Assembly (NCBI RefSeq): GCF_001194135.2
Contig: NC_069000.1
Coordinates: 20,979,632-21,014,641, forward strand
Source of the DNA: Octopus bimaculoides
Taxonomy: Eukaryota
Direction: 5' to 3'
DNA length: 35,010 nucleotides
A model generated the notes under the pieces. It was not told the DNA's origin, made no database searches, and saw only the letters and a program-made list of their open reading frames with translations. Made by a program: the position numbers and the translations under genes. Positions within the stretch are counted from its first letter, which is position 1, and each line of letters opens with the position of its first letter. Shown piece by piece: positions 4,234-34,783 of this stretch.

Positions 4234-5629
4234 TCAGGTCATCCCATAAGTTCTGTCCGAATTTTGAATAAAGAAAACAAGTGATCGAATGTTATATTTA
4301 ATTGAAATTTAATCATCAATGTACTTTCCCTGATTATCTATGACTTCCTTCCATCTATTTACAAGCTTTTTAATCCCATCAATGTAAAACTCTTTTGGTT
4401 TCAAAGCGAAGAACTCTGAAATGTCAGTTTCGACCTCCTCCTGGCTTGCGAAAGTTATGTCCCCCAAATGATTCTGTAAACTATGAAACAAATGGTAGTC
4501 TGAAGAAGCAAGGTCGGGAGAATAAGGTGGATNNNNNNNNNNNNNNNNNNNNNNNNNNNNNNNNNNNNNNNNNNNNNNNNNNNNNNNNNNNNNNNNNNNN
4601 NNNNNNNNNNNNNNNNNNNNNNNNNNNNNNNNNNNNNNNNNNNNNNNNNNNNNNNNNNNNNNNNNNNNNNNNNNNNNNNNNNNNNNNNNNNNNNNNNNNN
4701 NNNNNNNNNNNNNNNNNNNNNNNNNNNNNNNNNNNNNNNNNNNNNNNNNNNNNNNNNNNNNNNNNNNNNNNNNNNNNNNNNNNNNNNNNNNNNNNNNNNN
4801 NNNNNNNNNNNNNNNNNNNNNNNNNNNNNNNNNNNNNNNNNNNNNNNNNNNNNNNNNNNNNNNNNNNNNNNNNNNNNNNNNNNNNNNNNNNNNNNNNNNN
4901 NNNNNNNNNNNNNNNNNNNNNNNNNNNNNNNNNNNNNNNNNNNNNNNNNNNNNNNNNNNNNNNNNNNNNNNNNNNNNNNNNNNNNNNNNNNNNNNNNNNN
5001 NNNNNNNNNNNNNNNNNNNNNNNNNNNNNNNNNNNNNNNNNNNNNNNNNNNNNNNNNNNNNNNNNNNNNNNNNNNNNNNNNNNNNNNNNNNNNNNNNNNN
5101 NNNNNNNNNNNNNNNNNNNNNNNNNNNNNNNNNNNNNNNNNNNNNNNNNNNNNNNNNNNNNNNNNNNNNNNNNNNNNNNNNNNNNNNNNNNNNNNNNNNN
5201 NNNNNNNNNNNNNNNNNNNNNNNNNNNNNNNNNNNNNNNNNNNNNNNNNNNNNNNNNNNNNNNNNNNNNNNNNNNNNNNNNNNNNNNNNNNNNNNNNNNN
5301 NNNNNNNNCTCATCTGAATTTTGCAAACCATCTTCTGCAAGTTCTTTCATTCAAGCATTCTTTCCTAAAAACTGAGTGTATGTTTCGAGTCGCTTCGGCC
5401 GCAAACTTTCCTTTTTTGTACTCATAAAGCATTATGTGCCACAAATGCTTTTTGGATACTTCCAAAGAAATTTTAATTCTATTGTTCTGTAAAATAATAT
5501 TTAATTAGTTAAATGTACACAAATGCATAAAAATAATTTTTAATTCCATTAGACATTCTAAAATACTATTAAATTTCATTCGATTTAAAAAAAAAGGTAA
5601 AATCGGACAGAATTTATGGGATAACCTGA
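4234..5629 (-). mobile_element. mariner DNA transposon, both ends present, middle in gap, probably inactive
   Basis: 27-bp TIRs TCAGGTCATCCCATAAGTTCTGTCCGA (4234-4260) and its inverse (5603-5629, 2 mismatches), flanked by TA at 4232-33 and 5630-31. Minus-strand N-terminus (TTG)EVSKKHLWHIMLYEYKKGKFAAEATRNIHSVFRKECLNERTCRRWFAKFR at 5465-5310. C-terminus PPYSPDLASSDYHLFHSLQNHL...LVNRWKEVIDNQGKYIDD* at 4532-4309. The start codon reads TTG. Confidence 0.95.
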
Positions 5630-11600: not shown

Positions 11601-11604
<4 letters not shown>

Positions 11605-11900
11605 CATCATTCAGTTTATTCGAAGATTTCTTGGCAATAGAGAAAGAACCGGTTTCTAACCTAGATCCACGGCTCCTTCATTGGAATTTCAATATCAATA
11701 ACAGGGTATTTTGCACGTATGTATGTATGCATGCATGTATGTATGTATGCATGCATGTATGTATGTATATATGTATGTATGTATGCATGCATGTATGTAT
11801 GTATGTATGTGCAGATTTGTATGATTCGTGTATATATTTTCATGCATATAGTTGCATATCTAGACATGCACAAATATATATTTAAATAATAGACTTCTGG
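11601..11900 (-). mobile_element. R4/Dong-clade retrotransposon, 5'-truncated copy C (3' UTR only)
   Basis: Reverse complement matches the UTR following the REL ORF at 32396-32491 and the tails at 33692-33918 and 33918-34068 (shared ttccaatgaaggagc, internal (CATA)n). The 3' end aaactgaatgatgataa runs into (TA)n. Confidence 0.85.
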
Positions 11901-11904
11901 ATAT

Positions 11905-12026
11905 CATTAGTGGTGTGGTGAGGAGAGGCTGGTATGCCTGGGCGACTGCTGGCCTTCCACAAACAAACTTGCCCGGACTTGTACCTCAGAGGGTAACTTT
12001 CTAGATGCAATCCCATGGTCATTCAT
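11905..12026. mobile_element. probable interspersed repeat fragment (unclassified)
   Basis: GC-richer 120-bp island between an R4/Dong tail and microsatellites. Resembles, from memory only, a common octopus repeat. Confidence 0.3.
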
Positions 12027-12029
12027 GTA

Positions 12030-12064
12030 TGTATATACATGTATGTATATATAACTGTATGTTC

Positions 12065-14109: not shown

Positions 14110-15520
14110 AAACGTCGAGTAAACTTCATTGTGGTTTCTAAAACATTCTGACGGACAGAATTGTTTCCACTTTTTGGTCATAAAGATGCTGCCATTCATT
14201 CCAACTGGATTAGGATTTAGGGCGGTGTAAACCTTTTCTTCAAAGGTCCTACTATCGATTGAATAGAAATAAACTGATATCGGATCCTTCAATTGCGGAA
14301 CGTACCAGTGCCCCGATACATAACCTAACACAGATGTTAATATTCTGTGAAAATACAACATCCTTCCTATTGGAATTTGACTTACATCGACAAAAGAGGT
14401 TCTCCTATGGATACGCTCTTATGGCAAACATACGGATTAAATATTTTAAGGAAATAGTTTTGGATAGGAAACCACTTATGTCAACCGTGTTGCTGAGATA
14501 TGCAGACGACACCTTCATACCCTGGCCTCACAAGGGAGATGTGCAAATATTGCTGGGCCATGTGAATACAATAGGTTCCTCAATACAGTTTACAATAGAC
14601 AAAGATAATAAGCTGAACTTTATGGATGTGCTAATAAATAGTACAGAGTGTTGTCTCACAACATCTATAGATCACAAAACTCATATTCGCCTTCCAATAT
14701 TTAAAATTTGATTCCCGTTATCCCGGCAGCGTGAAGAAACGAACTGTCTGTGATCTACAGCATCGAAAAACGAACCCAAACATATGCAAACAAAAACTGG
14801 TGAAAATTAGAAAAAAACCCCATCATATTAACTGCTATCCTGCAAAAACGAAGATATAAAAGGTCGCAAATATTGGTCTAACACCAGCGACAGTCCGTGT
14901 AATTTACAAAAGGCATGTCCTGAGAGAAAATTCAAAGACGGAAGGTCTGCAGGTCGAAAAACATCGGGCAGTTGTACTCATTGGGGATATCTCACCACCA
15001 AATAAAGCCTCTATCAGAAGAAATCAGGACTAAAAATAATGTGTATTCCACCCAATTCATCTGTAATAGATGATCTATATAGGCAAAAGGTTTGAAATTT
15101 TAGGAAGCGGGATAGTCGATTACATCGACCTCAGTGCTCAACTGGTATTTATCATATTGACCCCGAAAGGCTGAAAGGCAAAGTCGACCTCGGTGGCATT
15201 TGAATTCAGAAATTATAGACGAGCCAAATGCCGCTAAGCATTTTATCCTGCGTGCTAACGATTCTGCCAGTTCACAGCCTTGCACCTGTAACAGATAATA
15301 TAGATGTGACCTGCCTACCTATAGGATGATCGTAAAGCCGTATTGTACAAGGATACAGAAAAATCAGACCATGGTTTATCACTTGTGAGAGGCAAAGTTA
15401 AGACGAGAAGATTTGTAGAAAAAAAAAAAACAAGATGATAGTGAACAGCACTCGAAGACAACTAAAAGAATAAGGATATGCTTTGAGCTCTCAGACTCTT
15501 CCCCTAAGTTGAATCTTAGA
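14110..15520 (+). pseudogene. Penelope-like retroelement RT plus GIY-YIG endonuclease, heavily decayed
   Basis: Motifs in order across frameshifts: GVNLFFKGP (DVxxLFT), MANIRIKYFKE, LRYADDTFIPWPH, IQFTIDKDNKLNFMDVLI, then VYSTQFICNR..IYIG (GIY-YIG) at about 15040-15084, then DRKAV...EKSDH and RRQLKE after the SINE insert. Confidence 0.8.
15084..15281 (-). mobile_element. tRNA-derived SINE, family A, inserted in the Penelope relic
   Basis: Reverse complement: aaggctgtgaactggcagaatcgttagcacgc...tgaattcaaatgccaccgaggtcgactttgcctttcagcctttcggggtc. Homologous to 581-730 and 6323-6480. Confidence 0.88.
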
Positions 15521-21612: not shown

Positions 21613-22624
21613 TGGTGTTCGTACGGCAGGCGCTAGCGTAACGAAAACAGCCGAAATGTTTGGTGTATCAAGAAGTACTGTCTCGAAAGTAATGGCAGCC
21701 TTTGAGAAAGAGGCAAAAACCTCCTCATCGAAACAAAACTCCAGAAGAAAACCAAAACTTTCAGAATTGTTAGAAAGGATCACAAAAGTACAGCTCCCAA
21801 AATTACTACAGAGCTTAATGACCACCTCGAGAACCCAGTTTCCACAAAAACTGTTCACTGGGAGCTGCACAAAGTCAGATTTCACGGGAGGGCTGCAATC
21901 AGAAAACCACTACTTTCAAAAACAAATGTTGCAAATCGCTTAGAGAGGAGTAAAAACTTACAGATTTGGTCCCTAGAACAGTGGAAGAATGTTATTTTCT
22001 CGGACGAGTCGTCCTTTATCTTATTTCCGACCACCGGCCGAGTATACGTGTGGAGACAGCCAAAAGAAGCATTTGACCCAGACTGCCTTCTCCTAACTGT
22101 TAAACACAGAGGAGGCTCTGTGATAATCTGGGGTGGGGCTATATCTTGGAAATCCGGTGACCAAATGGTTTTCCTTCATGGCAGAATTAATAGTTAAGAC
22201 TATTTAAGCATTTTATCTGATCAAATTCATCCTATGGTTGCGGAACTGTTTCCGGATGGAAACGCAATCTTTCAGGATGATAAGGCACCAATTCACACAG
22301 CTAAAGTTGTTACTGATTGGCACGAAGAACATTCAAGTGAAGTTGAGCATCTTATCTGGCCACCACAGTCCCCAGATCTCAATATTATTCAACATTTATG
22401 GTGCATTTTAGAAAAACAAGTAAGGAGTCGATGTCCCCCACCATCATCACTACAAGAACTGGAAACTGTTTTAACTGAAGAATTGACAAAAATTCCTTTG
22501 GAAACAATTCAAACTTTGTACGAATCCATACTTCGTAGAATTCAAGCTGTAATTACTGCCAAAGGCGGTCCTAACCCATATTACAATAATTTTAAGGGGT
22601 TTCCATTATTATGTCCATCACCTG
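21613..22624 (+). mobile_element. Tc1-type transposon with DD36E spacing, decayed, 5' end in gap
   Basis: AGASVTKTAEMFGVSRSTVSKV (HTH), VIFSDESSF and FQDDKAPIH...WPPQSPDLNIIQH. There are 36 residues from the aligned catalytic D to the E position, which reads Q here. Right TIR GGGGTTTCCATTATTATGTCCATCACCTG|TA ends at 22624. Has frameshifts and an in-frame stop. Confidence 0.92.
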
Positions 22625-22697
22625 TATATATATATATATTCCGTTTATATATTTGTTTTGCAAGATTTTTGATGTGAAATCGTGTGTTGAAACAGAT

Positions 22698-28380: not shown

Positions 28381-30614
28381 AAACATTTATTAATAACAGT
28401 ATCCTAAATGTTTAGTAAACCTGAGACCCATAAACCAATGCAAGAGTAGGTTCCCTCACACTGATACAACCGATGCAGTACTTAACAACAAAACACGTGA
28501 ACGACACATATCGTGCACTACATGAACTAATTGTGCTTTAGTTGTATAAAAATAAACTACAGCGTGTATCACATCTAAGAATACATAGAATGTGTTACGA
28601 AAACGCCAGTATTAAAAGCGTTCTCCTCGACACAAAACCTCGGAGTGGCAACGTAGAACATGTTTTTGACAACAAAAACAACACATATTTTTCAATGTAT
28701 ACATGTAAGCTGTGAATTTCACGACACAAACTGTTAAATGCGATACCCAAGTACAACACTTTCCACTTTCTCATCATTTACAAGGAGCCATCGTAGTTCA
28801 TTATAATACATTACACGAATTTCATCTATTCATCTATTCATCTCCCTAGCCATGAAATATATCAAATTATCCACAAAGGTTGTTGCCAACCACAAACCAG
28901 AAACTGTAACCACAAACGAACCAATCCCTATTTTACAATCAACTCTTCAACGCTCGTATTTTTTTAAAGACTTTTTTATTCATTCGGCTTCTTATGCTTG
29001 TTTGCACGCCTACTTACTTTTTATAGTTGTTTGCTTGTTTCTCAGTTTGTTTCCAGCTTATATTTACCATCACAGCAATGCCTCTTCTCAGTTCAGTAAA
29101 AAATGCAGTATCATGTCTATTGGCATCGTATATAAACATGTATTTATTACACCATCAATAGAAAGTTAGCATCTATTACATAATGTGCAAATATGTATTC
29201 TTTCAGATGACAAAGATTTATTATTAGTTTGCTTTGATTTATATACCCTTTAAATGACTAACAATACCAGCCTCACAAAGACAAACCAGCTTATAAATAG
29301 AATATTTGAAGAAATGATTGATATTTACGAAGTTTCTTTTCCCTGCATCTCGTTTCAGTTTCATAAGTTTAATGCGATTCTTTTCAAAATGCATGAAAAC
29401 ATTTTTACTCAATGATAGCCTCTCATATGCAATTATTTCTCAAGTTTTCATGTGAAAATTGCCTTTTTTAACAAATCAGATTTAAAAATTTAAGGCAATC
29501 TTTGCATCTTTTACTTCAGTTCGTAAGAGAATCTTTGTTCTCTTTGGAGAAATATGTCCTCTATATAATAGGTGCTGTGAAATGCTTTTATCTTCTATAC
29601 AATCTATATAACCTCCCTATCCACCCTCGTTTGCAACGTTGGAAGAGAGCGTCGAAATTTATAACATTTACTAACTCAAAATCCGCAACATAATTCACGC
29701 ATACTCTCCAAGATACGTGCAAATTTTGTCGAAGATACTTTTATTGAAAATGCTCCAGCTATTTAACAGGTTTCGAAAAAAAATGTACATGCTTTACAGC
29801 CATACAACAAAACAGACAAAATTGGGAAATGGATATTTTAGTAATCTTTTATATACAACATTACTAAAATATCTATTTCCGTTGTGACTATAGAGAAGAT
29901 TGTCATTTCCTAACAAAAATATCCATGACTTCTGAATTCTATTTGTAATTTCGTCATCAAGATTTTCATCCTTGTTTGATATGCTACCAAAATATTGAAG
30001 GAAAATGCGTTTTTCAAGGTTACTAAGTAAACCTGAACAGTGATAACAGCTTCATATTAGGGGCGGCATTTGATAGAATCATCAGTGCAGATTGATTACA
30101 TTAATGGTGATTCTTGATAGTTTTTTTAGTGTCATTGATTGGTTATGGTTAGGGTTATTAACGATATACAACACTAGTGACGGTGGAGATCAGTGGTGAT
30201 ATTTGGTATTGTTAAGATAAGTATTGTAATTCCGCCTACCATAATCAAAGGGCGTGAGTTTAAATTTTTATGGTTTCTATACATGAAAGTGTGTGAGACA
30301 ACCAGCTAGGGGATTAGAGATTAACGGCAGTTTGGGGGGGCTTTTACGTTTTGTCTCTTTTTTTCGCAGTTTAAGCACGCCAAAATTGGAGTTCGCCTAT
30401 ATGCCCGTGGCCCTATATACCCGAAAATGCGGTAATTTTTATGATTAATTTCCGAACGCAAGCTGGCTTAAATCTTTGGCTATACACATAAGTAATATTT
30501 ATAATGAGATGTTATCCATAAGAGTTCAAGGGCTTTTTTTTAATATATATTGAGTGACTGTATCACTGACATCAGTGTATCAGATGTCCACATGCGCGTA
30601 CATACATGCAGAGA

Positions 30615-30790
30615 GAGAGGAGGGAGAGGGAGAGAAAGGACGATTGGGAAAGAGGCCGAATGAGAGAGAGGACGAGTGAGAGAGAAGACGAGAGAGAGAG
30701 AGGACGAGTGAGAGGGAGGACGAGTGAGAGAGAGAGGACGAGTGAGAGAGAGAATGAATGAGAGAGAGAACAGCACACACACACATACAT
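30615..30790. repeat. (GA)n-derived repeat with about five GAGGACGAGTGA units
   Basis: Direct reading. Confidence 0.85.
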
Positions 30791-31262
30791 GTGTACATAC
30801 CTATGATAGCTATCGGAAAGATAACCCCGAGGACAAAGAAATAAGAAGCCACAGAATGGTAGAAGCCATAGCCACTGATAATAAAAAGGAGTGCTGATGA
30901 ATGAAATATCCCAGTGAAGACCTCGATAAAATGTAAGCATAACAGACCTGATATAATGATTTGGGATAGAGAAGAGGAAACGTGCACAGTTGTGGAAATT
31001 AGCTGCACAGCGGATGTTAACATAATTCTGAAGATCATTGAAAAAGAGAATACCTACGCCGAACTATTGAGAAATCAGCAGTTACTCCATCCAGAATACA
31101 AGTTCAGGTTTATACCTGCAATTATTAGGGCCCTGTGATATATGTAACACACTGCCTAAACACCAATCTAGAGAAATTAGGCTTCTCAAAACCAGAAAGG
31201 AGAAAGCTAATTCAAAGACTACAGATCCAATCCATCACTGGAACTGAAAAAAATCAGAAGTT

Positions 31263-32395
31263 GGATCCGTTCAATTTGGCACACAGATTTTTTTAATTAA
31301 TTTTTTAAAACTAAACAGTTTGAAACATCGTATACTGGTGGAATGTCTCACGCAGGACACGGTTTACTTTGAATATTTTTGACAAAATTTGGTATTTTCA
31401 GAAGTTATTTCGTGTTAAAGTTGTCGTTTTGGGGTAATTTCAACCAATCAACGACGTGTATTCAGTTGAAGAAAGCTACTGCTGTTTGCGATAGTGATCG
31501 AAGAGGAACAACTTCCGGGTCATCTCTACTAAATGTCACCACTCTGTGCTATTCATTTTTTGTTTACTCCCCGTGTTGCATATTACACGCTTTTTGTTTT
31601 TGTTTTTGGTCTTCGCGTCGGACTAACTAGTAAACATCGAAGAACCAATACCAAGATGGAAGAAATATTATTTACATATATTTATTCGTTTGCTCGACAT
31701 CGGTGTTTTATCCACACATAAAGCGCACCAGTGTTTGAAAGACCTATAGAGCTACGGGTCCGCAGCTAGCTTTTTTGTTGTTGATGTGTATGTAGTTTTA
31801 AAATGGCTTATTTTACAACTATGAGATGTATTGTTATTGTCATGATTTTATCTCACTATAATCAGCAACAAACACGTCATCAATACAAAAGTATTAGATT
31901 AAAAATATCATCATCAAAATATGAAGGTAAAACAAAACAAATAGCGGCTTATACACAGGAAAATACAGTAATTGTAGTGACAGTGACAAGTTCGCTCGCT
32001 GGTTGCTAGCTGATAGCGTGGAAGGCAGGGAAAGAGTAAGGAATGCACGGTGCTGACTAGAAAGGAAGAAAGGATAAAGGTGGCATCGCCTTCGCTCGAC
32101 ATACGAATAGAATAGAGCGGTGACATTTAGTAGAGATAACCCGGAAGTTGTTCCTCTTTGATTACAATCGCAAACAGCAGCAGCTTTCTTCAACTGAATA
32201 CACGTCGTTGATTGGTTGAAATTACCCAAATACGACAACTTTAACACGAAATAACTTCGAAAATACCAAATTTTGTCAAAAATGTTGAAAGTAAACTGTG
32301 TTCTGTGTGAGACATTCCACCAGTATACGAAGTTTCAAACTGTTTAGTTTTAAAAAATTAATTTTAAAAATCAGTGCGCCAAACTGAACAGATCT
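31263..32395. mobile_element. long-TIR foldback element 2, 1133 bp, 8-bp TSD
   Basis: Arms 31263-31554 and 32105-32395 (about 291 bp) are inverted copies. Flanks CAGAAGTT (31255-62) and CAGATGTT (32396-403). The 550-bp spacer is non-coding. Confidence 0.92.
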
Positions 32396-32491
32396 CAGAT
32401 GTTTATCATTTAAATATATATGAGCATGTCTAGATATGCAACTATATGCATGAGAATACATACATAAAGCAAAACATACAAACTTGTACAT

Positions 32492-33918
32492 GAGCCCTTG
32501 ATGTGAAGACCCGGAAAATACTAACGAGCACGAACAACTTTCACATCAATAGCGATGTAGACCGCCTATACTTAAAACGAAATAAAGGAGGGAGGGGCCT
32601 AACATCAATTCAGACTGCTTTTGAATGCCGTGTCATATCTCTTCGACATCATCTCATAACCACCAAGTGTCGAAGTGCAGCCCTTGATGAAGTCTGCAGA
32701 CATGAGGTAAATACCATCATGAGATTGAGAAAGCAACTACTTGACAAGCATTCCTTATTCGACAACCCTGAACACTTACCCAAAGAAATTGCAAGACTCT
32801 ACCGTAACATAACATCAGAGGAGAGGATGAATGCATTCCAGCAGAAGACCATGCATGGATACGATAACAAAAAGTTCCAGGGTGATAACAACATTGACAA
32901 CCAGAGCAGTCTATCGTGGACAAACAATCGGGTCACCAACTCTCACTTTGAAGGGTATGCCTTTGCTATTCAAGAACAAGAAATAGCAACCAAATTCCTA
33001 ATAAACAAACGGGGCAGAGAGGCGGGCAAAGCGCCACAATGTAATAATCGATGCAGACTCTGTGGAATCAGTATTGAAGATATCACCCACATCATTAGCA
33101 GCTGTCCAAAAATGTCATCACGGTATTACCTNNNNNNNNNNNNNNNNNNNNNNNNNNNNNNNNNNNNNNNNNNNNNNNNNNNNNNNNNNNNNNNNNNNNN
33201 NNNNNNNNNNNNNNNNNNNNNNNNNNNNNNNNNNNNNNNNNNNNNNNNNNNNNNNNNNNNNNNNNNNNNNNNNNNNNNNNNNNNNNNNNNNNNNNNNNNN
33301 NNNNNNNNNNNNNNNNNNNNNNNNNNNNNNNNNNNNNNNNNNNNNNNNNNNNNNNNNNNNNNNNNNNNNNNNNNNNNNNNNNNNNNNNNNNNNNNNNNNN
33401 NNNNNNNNNNNNNNNNNNNNNNNNNNNNNNNNNNNNNNNNNNNNNNNNNNNNNNNNNNNNNNNNNNNNNNNNNNNNNNNNNNNNNNNNNNNNNNNNNNNN
33501 NNNNNNNNNNNNNNNNNNNNNNNNNNNNNNNNNNNNNNNNNNNNNNNNNNNNNNNNNNNNNNNNNNNNNNNNNNNNNNNNNNNNNNNNNNNNNNNNNNNN
33601 NNNNNNNNNNNNNNNNNNNNNNNNNNNNNNNNNNNNNNNNNNNNNNNNNNNNNNNNNNNNNNNNNNNNNNNNNNNNNNNNNNNNNNNNNNNNTGCATGCA
33701 TCTAGACATGAAAATATATACAGAAAAACGCATCCATAAAACAAACATACAAATCTGTGCATACACTAACACCAAATACTGCACACACACACACACACAC
33801 ATATGCACAAATACCTAGTTGATGTTGATAAAAGTTCCAATGAAGGAGCCTTGAATCTATGTTAGAGTCCGGCTCTTTCTCTATGGACAAGAAGTACAGA
33901 AATGAAACTGATTGATAA
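32492..33918 (+). mobile_element. R4/Dong-clade retrotransposon copy B (5'-truncated: RT thumb, zinc knuckle, gap, 3' UTR)
   Basis: Uninterrupted frame ALDVKTRKIL...SDVDRLYLKRNKGGRGL...FEGYAFAIQEQEI...CRLCGISIEDITHIISSC (CX2CX8HX4C, 33052-33105). After the 560-bp gap comes a full 3' UTR ending gaaactgattgataa. Confidence 0.88.
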
Positions 33919-34074
33919 CATACATGCATACATACATACATGCATACGTACATACATACATACATACATACATACATACATACATACATACATACATACA
34001 AAAATACCGTATCATTGATGTTGAAATTCCAATGAAGGAGCTTTGAATCTAAGTTAGAAACCGGCTCTGAGTTT

Positions 34075-34188
34075 ATAGATAGACAGAGACAGAGATAGAC
34101 AAACAGACAGACAGACAGGCGGGCAGACAGACAGGCAGGCAGACAGGCAACCAGATGGACAGGCAGACAGACAGGTAGGTAGATAAGT

Positions 34189-34279
<91 letters not shown>

Positions 34280-34340
34280 TATAGGGAGGCAGTCACACAG
34301 ACAGACACAGAAAGACACACAGACAGACACAGACAAACAC

Positions 34341-34395
<55 letters not shown>
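34075..34395. repeat. compound (GACA)/(GA)/(GATA) microsatellite
   Basis: Direct reading. Confidence 0.95.
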
Positions 34396-34783
34396 CGACC
34401 AGCTAAAAAGTCACAAATGAACGGGCAGTTAAGGAGTGGATAAATGTGCGTGTGTGAATCGCTAACCAAGAAACACTGATCCACTCCCAGTTGCTCAACT
34501 TAAAGGTTCTTTGTAAAACATGTGTATAGCAAGGGAACCTCTACATATTTGATCGCAAATATATCGTCACAGACACATGTACGTACATAAACAAACAACG
34601 CGTATTAATGATGTAGGTGGCGAACGTATTGAGCACTAGGAACTTGTTTGACTGACAATTATATATGCTTCAATTATGAAAGGAACAAAATGACACGCAT
34701 TCATACTTTTAGACACATACTACAGACATGCGTACACACATGCGTATGTACAAAAGTACTTAAATACATGCATACCATTGAAA

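What the first reader, a model, noticed from the sequence alone, without database searches (positions are those of the whole stretch)
30799..34068. R4/Dong retrotransposon that carries its own target: copy B inserted in the (CATA)n tract of copy A's 3' UTR
Seen: the order REL, partial UTR, RT thumb/zinc knuckle, full UTR, second UTR end is impossible for one element but resolves exactly as a nest. Copy A's UTR breaks at ...aaacttgtacat (32491) and resumes as acatacatgcatac... (33918). This is the point where uninterrupted copy C has ...aaatctgcacatacatac. The 560-bp gap fits the roughly 500 bp of REL region plus UTR start expected for B. B's frame is open for about 210 codons while A has stops, matching the nesting order. 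A's 5' junction is in acacatacatgtgtacatac and C ends in (TA)n. Established: R4-clade elements use a REL endonuclease, and Dong targets microsatellite repeats. Inference: this lineage targets CATA/TA repeats and exports a fresh target with every insertion, a self-seeding loop that would spread (CATA)n tracts and build nested arrays. I do not know whether this has been reported.
Basis: partly seen in the sequence, partly recalled or inferred. Interest (0 to 1): 0.75.

Follow-up and report, generated by a model that had tools for sequence, protein, structure and literature searches.

The report
Nested octopus LINE copies at (CATA)n
An old, broken copy of an octopus jumping gene (a LINE with a restriction-like endonuclease) has been hit twice, once by an unrelated DNA transposon and once by a young copy of its own family that landed in the (CATA)n repeat inside its tail; the nest is real, but it is an ordinary outcome for LINEs that end in a microsatellite.

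Summary
With the insertions removed, copy A (30799-34068) is collinear with the uninterrupted copy C (11900-11603, minus strand). A breaks at 32491 exactly where C's (CATA)n tract begins. About 8 raw reads from three independent libraries cross the 32491|32492 junction, so it is not a misjoin. B is young (about 2% from the high-copy consensus, 213 open codons). A is old (roughly 7-10% or more from consensus, with stops).

- Most of the "partial UTR" (31264-32394) is a foreign 1,131-bp element with 291-bp inverted arms and a 9-bp target duplication.
- B's own internal tract is (CA)11, not (CATA)n.
- The sequence upstream of C is not LINE ORF.
- The gap stays unread, although both of its edges continue as one B element predicts.

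Family-wide read evidence shows an internal (CATA)n tract and a (CATA)n 3' tail in most copies. A preference for (CATA)n is plausible but cannot be separated from an element-borne tail. The "self-seeding loop" was not tested genome-wide. Microsatellite-targeting LINEs (Dong, Waldo, Togen) and LINE-born microsatellites are already known, and Dong-R4 LINEs are already annotated as active in Octopus. Verdict: a new member of a known kind, of modest interest.

The parts
30799..31263 (+). Copy A, 5'-truncated. It holds the REL (PD-(D/E)XK) endonuclease remnant and the ORF tail, with stops and frameshifts. The 5' junction follows ...cacacatacatgtgtacatac.
   Evidence: Translation. Alignment with relatives P0014 and P0019. 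A 0-difference 922-bp contig spans 30400-30841. The family consensus continues upstream as VARTLYNEIR, so A is truncated.
31264..32394 (.). Foreign non-autonomous DNA element of 1,131 bp inserted at the ORF end / UTR start of A. It has 291-bp terminal inverted arms (92% complementary) and is flanked by TCAGAAGTT / TCAGATGTT.
   Evidence: Inverted repeats I1 and I2. Self-BLAST gives 291 bp at 92%. A with the element removed is collinear with C across this point. A unique-depth 597-bp contig spans its right junction. Its longest reading frame (117 aa, 31894-32247 minus) lies in the spacer and right arm and was not searched.
32395..32491 (+). Copy A, left part of the 3' UTR. It ends at ...aaacttgtacat, the first unit of the family's internal (CATA)n tract.
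   Evidence: 81.6% identical to C 11899-11807. In other copies this segment runs on as TCTGCACATA(CATA)n.
32492..33131 (+). Copy B, 5'-truncated and young. It covers the RT thumb, the linker and the CCHC zinc knuckle, with 213 open codons.
   Evidence: Translation. 67% identical to O. bimaculoides LOC106878562. About 2% from the high-copy contigs, which extend 5' as GILDWTIDEI. Raw reads cross 32491|32492.
33132..33692 (+). Assembly gap. It should hold B's REL domain, ORF end and UTR start. This is inferred, not read.
   Evidence: Expected 527 nt from the A ruler against 561 N. Loose ends at both edges continue as predicted.
33693..33918 (+). Copy B 3' UTR. It has an internal (CA)11 tract at 33780-33802, a terminal module of about 110 nt with a predicted hairpin, and ends ...aaactgattgataa.
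   Evidence: MAFFT alignment with A and C. Hairpin. 3'-end consensus from reads.
33919..34000 (+). (CATA)n tract of about 20 units. It is B's own 3' tail merged with the rest of A's internal tract. The boundary between the two cannot be placed.
   Evidence: TRF row 33918-34000, period 4, 20.8 copies. 54-68% or more of B-like 3' ends in reads are followed by in-phase CATA units.
34001..34068 (+). Copy A, right part of the 3' UTR (first 68 nt of the terminal module). The last 45 nt or so are missing or decayed into (GACA)n/(GA)n/(GATA)n at 34077-34396.
   Evidence: BLAST to C 11810-11645 at 82%. Alignment. TRF.
11603..11900 (-). Copy C, uninterrupted: UTR-left, (CATA/CATG)n, terminal module, then (TA)19 and a gap. 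The upstream 130 nt are not LINE ORF.
   Evidence: No tRNA or Rfam match for the upstream part.

Best explanation
This is a three-layer pile of transposable elements in a microsatellite-rich intergenic stretch of an octopus genome, most likely Octopus bimaculoides.

1. An old 5'-truncated copy (A) of a LINE that encodes a restriction-like endonuclease inserted next to CA/CATA-like sequence.
2. A 1.13-kb long-inverted-repeat DNA element then inserted at the junction of A's ORF end and UTR, duplicating 9 bp.
3. Recently, a 5'-truncated copy (B) of the same LINE family inserted at the first unit of the (CATA)n tract inside A's 3' UTR.

The family's RNA has the layout UTR-left, (CAUA)n, a module of about 110 nt with a hairpin, and a (CAUA)n tail.

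Inferred mechanism: target-primed reverse transcription starts most easily where the nicked bottom strand, (TATG)n, can pair with the (CAUA)n tail. (CATA)n tracts are therefore favoured landing sites, and that includes the tract every family member carries. Self-nesting is then a by-product of tail-target pairing and not a special device.

Shown: the anatomy, the order of ages, the reality of the left junction, and the family-wide internal tract and tail.
Inferred: the tail-pairing preference, the content of the gap, and how the 82-nt tract divides between B's tail and A's tract.
For: - Collinearity of A-left plus A-right with C, with breakpoints meeting at the start of the tract.
- About 8 raw reads from three independent runs cover 32462-32521 without a break.
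- Age order: B differs at about 14 of 640 positions from the high-copy contigs. A differs from the majority base at 10 or more of about 150 positions even among reads at least 90% alike, and has stops. The arms of the inverted-repeat element are 8% apart.
- B is 5'-truncated relative to the family consensus.
- The internal (CATA)n is family-wide. 870-1,600 reads per run show (TACA)n directly upstream of the module, and UTR-left runs into (CATA)n in most reads.
- The tail: 54-68% of B-like 3' ends still fit 14 nt into the CATA flank, and the locus-specific G33926 is A in about 95% of reads.
- A's own 5' flank contains an 8-mer of (CATA)n, against a background of 2.0-2.3% of window positions.
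- The C-terminal fold of a relative matches R2 proteins first and PD-(D/E)XK nucleases next.
- A relative in another species ends in (CTTA)5, so tetranucleotide tails are a trait of this group.
Against: - The gap hides B's REL region, so the two halves of B are joined only by scaffolding and by family-level contig ends.
- The right junction lies in an 82-nt microsatellite that 150-nt reads cannot span.
- No Logan contig carries the left junction.
- About 10% of B-like copies have only CATACA followed by varied flanks. L002's tail is followed by non-repeat DNA. Both fit an element-made tail with little target choice.
- At least three other (CATA)n tracts in the window show no recognisable element copy beside them.
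- The locus was picked by a reader because it looked like a nest, so its existence says nothing about frequency.
Confidence: 0.75

Rival explanations
1. Assembly artefact. A high-copy LINE contig (B) was placed or patched into the unassemblable (CATA)n tract of A, or the two halves of B on either side of the gap belong to different copies.
For: The window has 13 gaps. B's sequence is a repeat of 50-90 copies. Depth is exactly 0 over 32487-32491 in the Logan contigs of X14, X15, X4, X1 and X20. B's contig stops only about 30 nt before the point where A's homologous region begins, which looks like an assembler reacting to two local copies.
Against: Raw reads of X36, X37 and X38 (5, 2 and 1 reads) cover the whole 60-nt stretch centred on the junction, including the A-specific 'cttgtacat'. 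Logan contigs are known to drop low-depth links between repeats. Both gap edges extend into the sequence expected for one element, and the gap size fits.
Confidence: 0.08
2. Random nest. The family has no target preference. B landed in A by chance, and the (CATA)n to its right is mostly B's own reverse-transcribed tail.
For: Tetranucleotide tails are element-borne in relatives and can be followed by unique DNA. About 10% of B-like copies have very short tails and varied flanks. If C is simply truncated, its 5' flank is not a repeat.
Against: B's 5' junction falls within 0-4 nt of where the tract starts in C, although the tract is only about 9% of A. A's own 5' flank is CATA-like, against a 2% background. 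Tail-target pairing is established for other LINEs with microsatellite tails and for the known microsatellite-specific LINEs (PMC3812793).
Confidence: 0.15
3. Tail-to-head array rather than a nest. A-right (34001-34068) is not the continuation of A. It is a separate, extremely 5'-truncated copy (module only) sitting in a (CATA)n tail, and A simply ends at its tract.
For: The terminal module is flanked by (CATA)n on both sides across the family, so module-only insertions into tails would look like this. A-right lacks its last 45 nt or so.
Against: A-left and A-right show similar divergence from C (82% and 82-87%) and together rebuild a complete UTR. LINE copies are not normally 3'-truncated. 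Thousands of reads support UTR-left-(CATA)n and (CATA)n-module as the standard layout.
Confidence: 0.05
4. Single-event chimera. The reverse transcriptase copying B RNA switched template onto another family RNA, creating A-left plus B in one insertion.
For: Template switching at 5' ends is known for R2 and L1. This comes from established knowledge and was not tested here.
Against: A is several-fold more diverged than B. A also carries a later DNA-element insertion whose arms are 8% apart. A continues on the far side of B.
Confidence: 0.02

Closest known systems
Dong (R4 clade; Bombyx mori, Anopheles gambiae, and the snail Biomphalaria glabrata), a restriction-like-endonuclease LINE that inserts in (TAA)n (PMC3812793, PMC4640811)
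   Same: A single-ORF LINE with RT, a CCHC knuckle and a C-terminal PD-(D/E)XK endonuclease. It is associated with a microsatellite and is found in molluscs. Octopus annotations call the abundant, recently active RLE LINEs 'Dong-R4' (PMC13282606).
   Different: The repeat here is (CATA)n, with (TA)n once, and not (TAA)n. Clade placement by RT phylogeny was not tested. The internal tract followed by a terminal module is not a described Dong feature, as far as I know.
Waldo (R1 clade; WaldoAg1/2, WaldoFs1), LINEs specific for (ACAY)n microsatellites; also Mino (AC)n, Kibi (TC)n, Koshi (TTC)n and Togen (TG)n (PMC3812793, PMC4640811)
   Same: The repeat class is the same: ACAT is CATA in another phase. 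The element sits inside its microsatellite, and the logic of landing in harmless multicopy DNA is the same.
   Different: Waldo, Mino, Kibi and Koshi use an APE-type endonuclease and belong to other clades. Specificity there was shown from many copies with both junctions in the repeat. That was not done here.
Retroelement-born microsatellites (Alu/L1 poly(A) tails and internal proto-microsatellites; RTE-associated microsatellite families in Lepidoptera; PMC3812793, PMC2887409 cited in PMC9115989)
   Same: Each new copy brings a tract that can expand. This explains families of microsatellites that share flanks.
   Different: Here the tract the element seeds is also a likely landing site for the same family. 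That feedback is plausible but was not measured.
R2 (Bombyx, zebra finch and turtle structures 8GH6, 9DOU, 9NL2)
   Same: Best structural match for the thumb-linker-knuckle-RLE region of a relative (Foldseek E 7e-6 to 1e-2). Insertion is by target-primed reverse transcription.
   Different: R2 is specific for 28S rDNA. Sequence similarity is too low for HMMER. This element is dispersed, with hundreds to thousands of copies.

Membership tests
LINE with restriction-like endonuclease (R2 group: CRE, R2, R4, NeSL, HERO) | C-terminal PD-(D/E)XK (RLE) domain | tested here: met
   Copy A has RPDIMIWDREEETCTVVEIS...K. An AF2 model of relative P0014 gives Foldseek top hits to R2 proteins and then to PD-(D/E)XK nucleases.
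LINE with restriction-like endonuclease (R2 group) | CCHC zinc knuckle between RT and RLE | tested here: met
   CRLCGISIEDITHIISSCP in B. Pfam zf-RVT matches at E 0.0036, below its cut-off. The motif is conserved in the alignment.
LINE with restriction-like endonuclease (R2 group) | Reverse transcriptase domain upstream in the same ORF | tested here: met
   It is not in the window because both copies are truncated. The family consensus continues 5' of 32492, and longer relatives carry PF00078.
R4/Dong clade | RT phylogeny groups with R4, Dong and Rex6 | not testable with these tools
   No named reference sequences were reachable, and the hits carry no clade names. The only support is indirect, from annotation in O. 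vulgaris (PMC13282606).
R4/Dong clade | Known targets: 28S rDNA (R4) or (TAA)n (Dong) | tested here: not met
   The flanks are (CATA)n for B and for the family consensus, and (TA)n for C.
Microsatellite-specific LINE | 3' junction lies in the repeat in most copies | tested here: met
   54-68% or more of B-like 3' ends are followed by at least 3.5 in-phase CATA units. The contig consensus reads ...AATAATGA|CATACATATT. This cannot be separated from an element-made tail.
Microsatellite-specific LINE | 5' junction also lies in the same repeat in most copies | tested here: inconclusive
   Only A (flank has ACATACAT, background 2%), B (edge of the tract) and C (ambiguous) were available. No genome-wide set could be built.
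LINE-SINE pair sharing a 3' tail (for copy C) | A non-LINE head (tRNA, 5S or other) joined to the LINE's 3' UTR and present in many copies | tested here: inconclusive
   The sequence upstream of C is unlike the LINE ORF, but there is no tRNA or Rfam match. The copy number of the head was not measured.
Long-TIR non-autonomous DNA transposon (Mutator-like is a guess), for 31264-32394 | Terminal inverted repeats plus a target-site duplication | tested here: met
   291-bp arms at 92%. The flanks are TCAGAAGTT and TCAGATGTT, and A is collinear with C once the element and one repeat are removed. The superfamily was not tested, and no transposase-length ORF is present.

The most novel reading that the evidence does not exclude
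The family's internal (CATA)n tract acts as a portable landing pad. Young copies would insert into tracts carried by older copies (LINE and any SINE partner) far more often than the element-borne share of genomic (CATA)n predicts. That would build nested arrays and drive the spread of (CATA)n microsatellites in octopus genomes.
Probability: 0.15. Interest if true: 0.55.

Novelty: new member of a known kind. Interest (0 to 1): 0.3.

Why it matters
If the preference for (CATA)n holds genome-wide, this would be a restriction-like-endonuclease LINE with a new microsatellite target in a cephalopod, a group whose genomes are unusually rich in both LINE/SINE copies and tetranucleotide repeats. It would help explain shared flanks of octopus microsatellite loci, which matters for marker design. 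It would also help explain why short-read octopus assemblies break at these sites. As it stands, the locus is a well-resolved example of an ordinary process: nested insertion of repeats. Its practical lesson is that Logan contigs can miss a true repeat-repeat junction that raw reads confirm.

Tried and rejected
- Logan contigs for the 32491|32492 junction: none carry it. I first read this as a possible misjoin and dropped that reading after raw reads spanned the junction.
- A first raw-read attempt on a 195-nt stretch was uninformative because the bins mixed the signals.
- My first attempt at a 3'-flank consensus ended the stretch exactly at the element's end, so the flanks were not reported. 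I repeated it with the flank included.
- A search for PacBio runs found none.
- I suspected that A's start coincides exactly with the end of B's contig, which would point to one mis-ordered element. I rejected this. The family consensus shows A starts about 10 codons further on, and A's 5' junction to unique DNA is in independent contigs.
- L001 (O. bimaculoides chromosome record) is full of gaps and lacks the UTR.
- L002 is another species and its UTR is not conserved.
- HMMER against PDB, with a single sequence and with a profile, gave nothing significant. Only the fold search worked.
- tRNA and Rfam scans of C's upstream part hit only microsatellite-like miRNA families below threshold.
- A profile search of the protein database returned 1,141 relatives but no clade names.
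Full report
**Where we are**

The window is cephalopod DNA.
- B's ORF is 67% identical to Octopus bimaculoides LOC106878562.
- A related copy lies on an O. bimaculoides chromosome record (L001).
- Runs of one coded species, including a 2015 sample, hold 100% of the sampled words of the unique flank.
- The window has 13 N gaps and is very rich in microsatellites.

**Anatomy**

Reading 30799-34068 on the + strand:

- *A, 30799-31263.* This is the back half of a restriction-like endonuclease domain (RPDIMIWDREEETCTVVEIS...) and the ORF tail, broken by several stops and frameshifts.
- *Foreign element, 31264-32394.* This stretch is not UTR. It is a 1,131-bp element whose two 291-bp ends are inverted repeats 92% complementary. 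It is flanked by TCAGAAGTT and TCAGATGTT. Removing it and one copy of that 9-mer makes A collinear with copy C. A unique-depth 597-bp contig spans its right junction.
- *A's UTR-left, 32395-32491.* It ends ...aaacttgtacat.
- *B, 32492-33131.* 213 stop-free codons (P = 3e-6 by composition) encode the RT thumb, the linker and a CX2CX8HX4C knuckle.
- *Gap, 33132-33692.*
- *B's UTR, 33693-33918.* It has an internal (CA)11 tract, not (CATA)n.
- *(CATA)n tract, 33919-34000.* About 20 units.
- *A's terminal module, 34001-34068.* This is its first 68 nt, after which A dissolves into (GACA)n/(GA)n/(GATA)n.

**Is it a nest?**

- Collinearity. BLAST places A-left on C 11899-11807 and A-right on C 11810-11645. 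The two pieces meet exactly where C's own (CATA/CATG)n tract starts.
- Age of B. It differs from the high-copy contigs at about 2% of positions.
- Age of A. It differs from the majority base at 10 or more of about 150 positions, even among reads at least 90% alike.
- Age of the foreign element. Its arms are 8% apart.
- The resulting order, A, then the inverted-repeat element, then B, fits the nesting.
- Truncation of B. The family consensus continues upstream of 32492 as ...GILDWTIDEI, so B is an ordinary 5'-truncated copy.
- Truncation of A. The consensus continues upstream of 30813 as VARTLYNEIR, so A is also truncated.
- A's 5' junction. A 922-bp contig with no differences spans it in four runs.

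**The misjoin test**

Logan contigs of five runs have exactly zero depth over 32487-32491. The bin values equal 2/7 of B's depth. That first suggested a patched join. Contigs, however, drop low-depth links between repeats.

On a 60-nt stretch centred on the junction, raw reads from three independent 2026 libraries cover every position from 32462 to 32521 at constant depth (5, 2 and 1 reads). That stretch includes A's private 'cttgtacat'. The join is therefore real and is present in other individuals.

**The gap**

It cannot be read.
- Using A as a ruler, 527 nt are expected against 561 N.
- High-copy contigs run past 33131 as ACCTATGAGACATGA, which continues the ORF as YYLPMRHD.
- They reach 33693 from AAATACATA, which matches A's ttaaatatata before the same UTR motif.
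- These contigs are family-level, so continuity of B across the gap is inferred. The reading frame across the gap does not matter, because the ORF must end inside it.
- B's contig stops about 30 nt before the point where A's homologous region begins. I take this as the assembler failing once two local copies share sequence.

**Family-level features from reads**

- UTR-left runs into TCTGCACATA(CATA)n in most reads.
- Directly upstream of the terminal module, 870-1,600 reads per run read (TACA)n AAAC AAAAATACCCTGTTG.
- The internal tract is therefore a standard part of the element, and A and C show the two halves joined.
- Of the reads that reach the last three bases of a B-like 3' end, 56%, 54% and 68% (three runs) still fit 14 nt into the CATA flank.
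- The locus-specific G at 33926 is A in about 95% of those reads.
- About 10% of those reads stop after CATACA and continue into unrelated sequence.
- The contig consensus for the main subfamily is ...GAAATAAAACTGAATAATGA|CATACATATT.
- (CATA)n is therefore the canonical 3' tail.
- A relative in another species ends in (CTTA)5 followed by unique DNA, so tetranucleotide tails are typical of this group and are element-borne.
- The terminal module has a predicted 9-bp hairpin kept in all three copies, without covariation. It may be the RT's recognition element. This is inference.

**What kind of element**

- An AlphaFold model of relative P0014 has mean pLDDT 61, with the nuclease part at 64-89.
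- Foldseek hits five R2 retrotransposon proteins first (E 7e-6 to 1e-2) and then PD-(D/E)XK nucleases.
- HMMER against PDB found nothing significant.
- Together with the knuckle and the RPD...E motif, this makes it a restriction-like-endonuclease LINE.
- I could not test R4/Dong placement. The only support is that a 2026 O. vulgaris annotation lists Dong-R4 as the main recently active RLE LINE group, with 5 families and 1,129 young insertions (PMC13282606).

**Mechanism and targeting**

The most likely mechanism is target-primed reverse transcription helped by pairing between the (CAUA)n tail and a nicked (TATG)n strand. That would favour (CATA)n tracts, including the one inside every family member.

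For this:
- B's 5' junction is within 0-4 nt of the tract's start.
- A's own 5' flank holds an 8-mer of (CATA)n, where only 2.0-2.3% of window positions do.

Against a strong claim:
- 3' flanks cannot separate tail from target.
- Only two or three 5' junctions were seen.
- C's upstream sequence is ambiguous.
- At least three other (CATA)n tracts here show no recognisable element copy beside them.
- The locus was chosen because it looked like a nest.

**Comparison with what is known**

- Microsatellite-specific LINEs are well described: Dong (TAA)n, including in a snail, Waldo (ACAY)n, Mino (AC)n, Kibi (TC)n, Koshi (TTC)n and Togen (TG)n. Most RLE clades are target-specific (PMC3812793, PMC4640811).
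- The same review covers the birth of microsatellites from LINE and SINE tails and from internal proto-microsatellites.
Combining them in one family is plausible, but it was not measured here.

**Verdict**

The classification is plausible but untested at clade level. The self-seeding loop is unproven. This is a new member of a known kind, of modest interest.

Noticed in passing
window 31264-32394: A 1,131-bp element with 291-bp inverted terminal arms (92% complementary) and a 550-bp spacer, flanked by TCAGAAGTT/TCAGATGTT, sits inside copy A. It has no transposase-length ORF. Contig depth suggests a few hundred copies. Long arms plus a 9-bp duplication suggest a Mutator-like non-autonomous element, which is a guess.
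   Followed up: partly
window 11900-12030 (minus strand): The 130 nt upstream of copy C (gaccatgggattgcatctagaaag...caccacaccactaatgatat) are unlike the LINE ORF tail seen in A. C may be a SINE-like partner that shares the LINE's 3' UTR, or a truncated copy next to unrelated DNA. No tRNA or Rfam match was found.
   Followed up: partly
window 33843-33880, 34035-34068, 11640-11678 (minus): A predicted hairpin GAAGGAGCC...GGCTCTTTC in the terminal 3' module is kept in all three copies. Two positions change to G-U and none are compensatory. It may be the RT recognition element.
   Followed up: partly
window 30613-30768 and 34077-34396: Copy A lies between two purine-rich arrays. Upstream is a 16-nt minisatellite, (GAGAGAGAGGACGAGT)n. 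Downstream is (GACA)n/(GA)n/(GATA)n, which replaces the last 45 nt or so of A's terminal module.
   Followed up: no
window 33131 versus 30799: B's assembled contig stops only about 30 nt, in element coordinates, before the position where copy A begins. This is probably the assembler failing once two nearby copies share sequence, not biology.
   Followed up: yes
window 22234-22677 (+): An ORF of 147 aa matches the Tc1-type DDE_3 transposase domain (Pfam E 1.9e-10). It is a DNA-transposon remnant.
   Followed up: partly
window 4309-4530 (-), next to gap 4533-5308: A translated piece, PPYSPDLASSDYHLFHSLQNHL...FYIDGIKKLVNRWKEVI, looks like the C-terminus of a mariner-type transposase. This is from memory; Pfam gave no hit on the 73-aa piece.
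   Followed up: partly
window 14259-14711 (+): An ORF with ...LLRYADDTFIPWPH...LNFMDVLI... looks like a reverse-transcriptase fragment of another retroelement. Pfam gave no hit.
   Followed up: partly
L002 5790-5977: A related RLE LINE in another species (ENA ERZ25042219) has an intact ORF end (...SGTVKIVKTFIGFKM*), a 170-nt UTR and a (CTTA)5 tail followed by non-repeat DNA.
   Followed up: partly
runs X36-X38, loose ends: The palindrome AGGTTCGTCCATCGATCGATGGACGAACCT recurs at many positions. It is most likely a linker or ligation junction of these proximity-ligation-type libraries and not genomic sequence. A GATC site near 32390 may explain why the junction has more spanning reads than 0.7x coverage predicts.
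   Followed up: no
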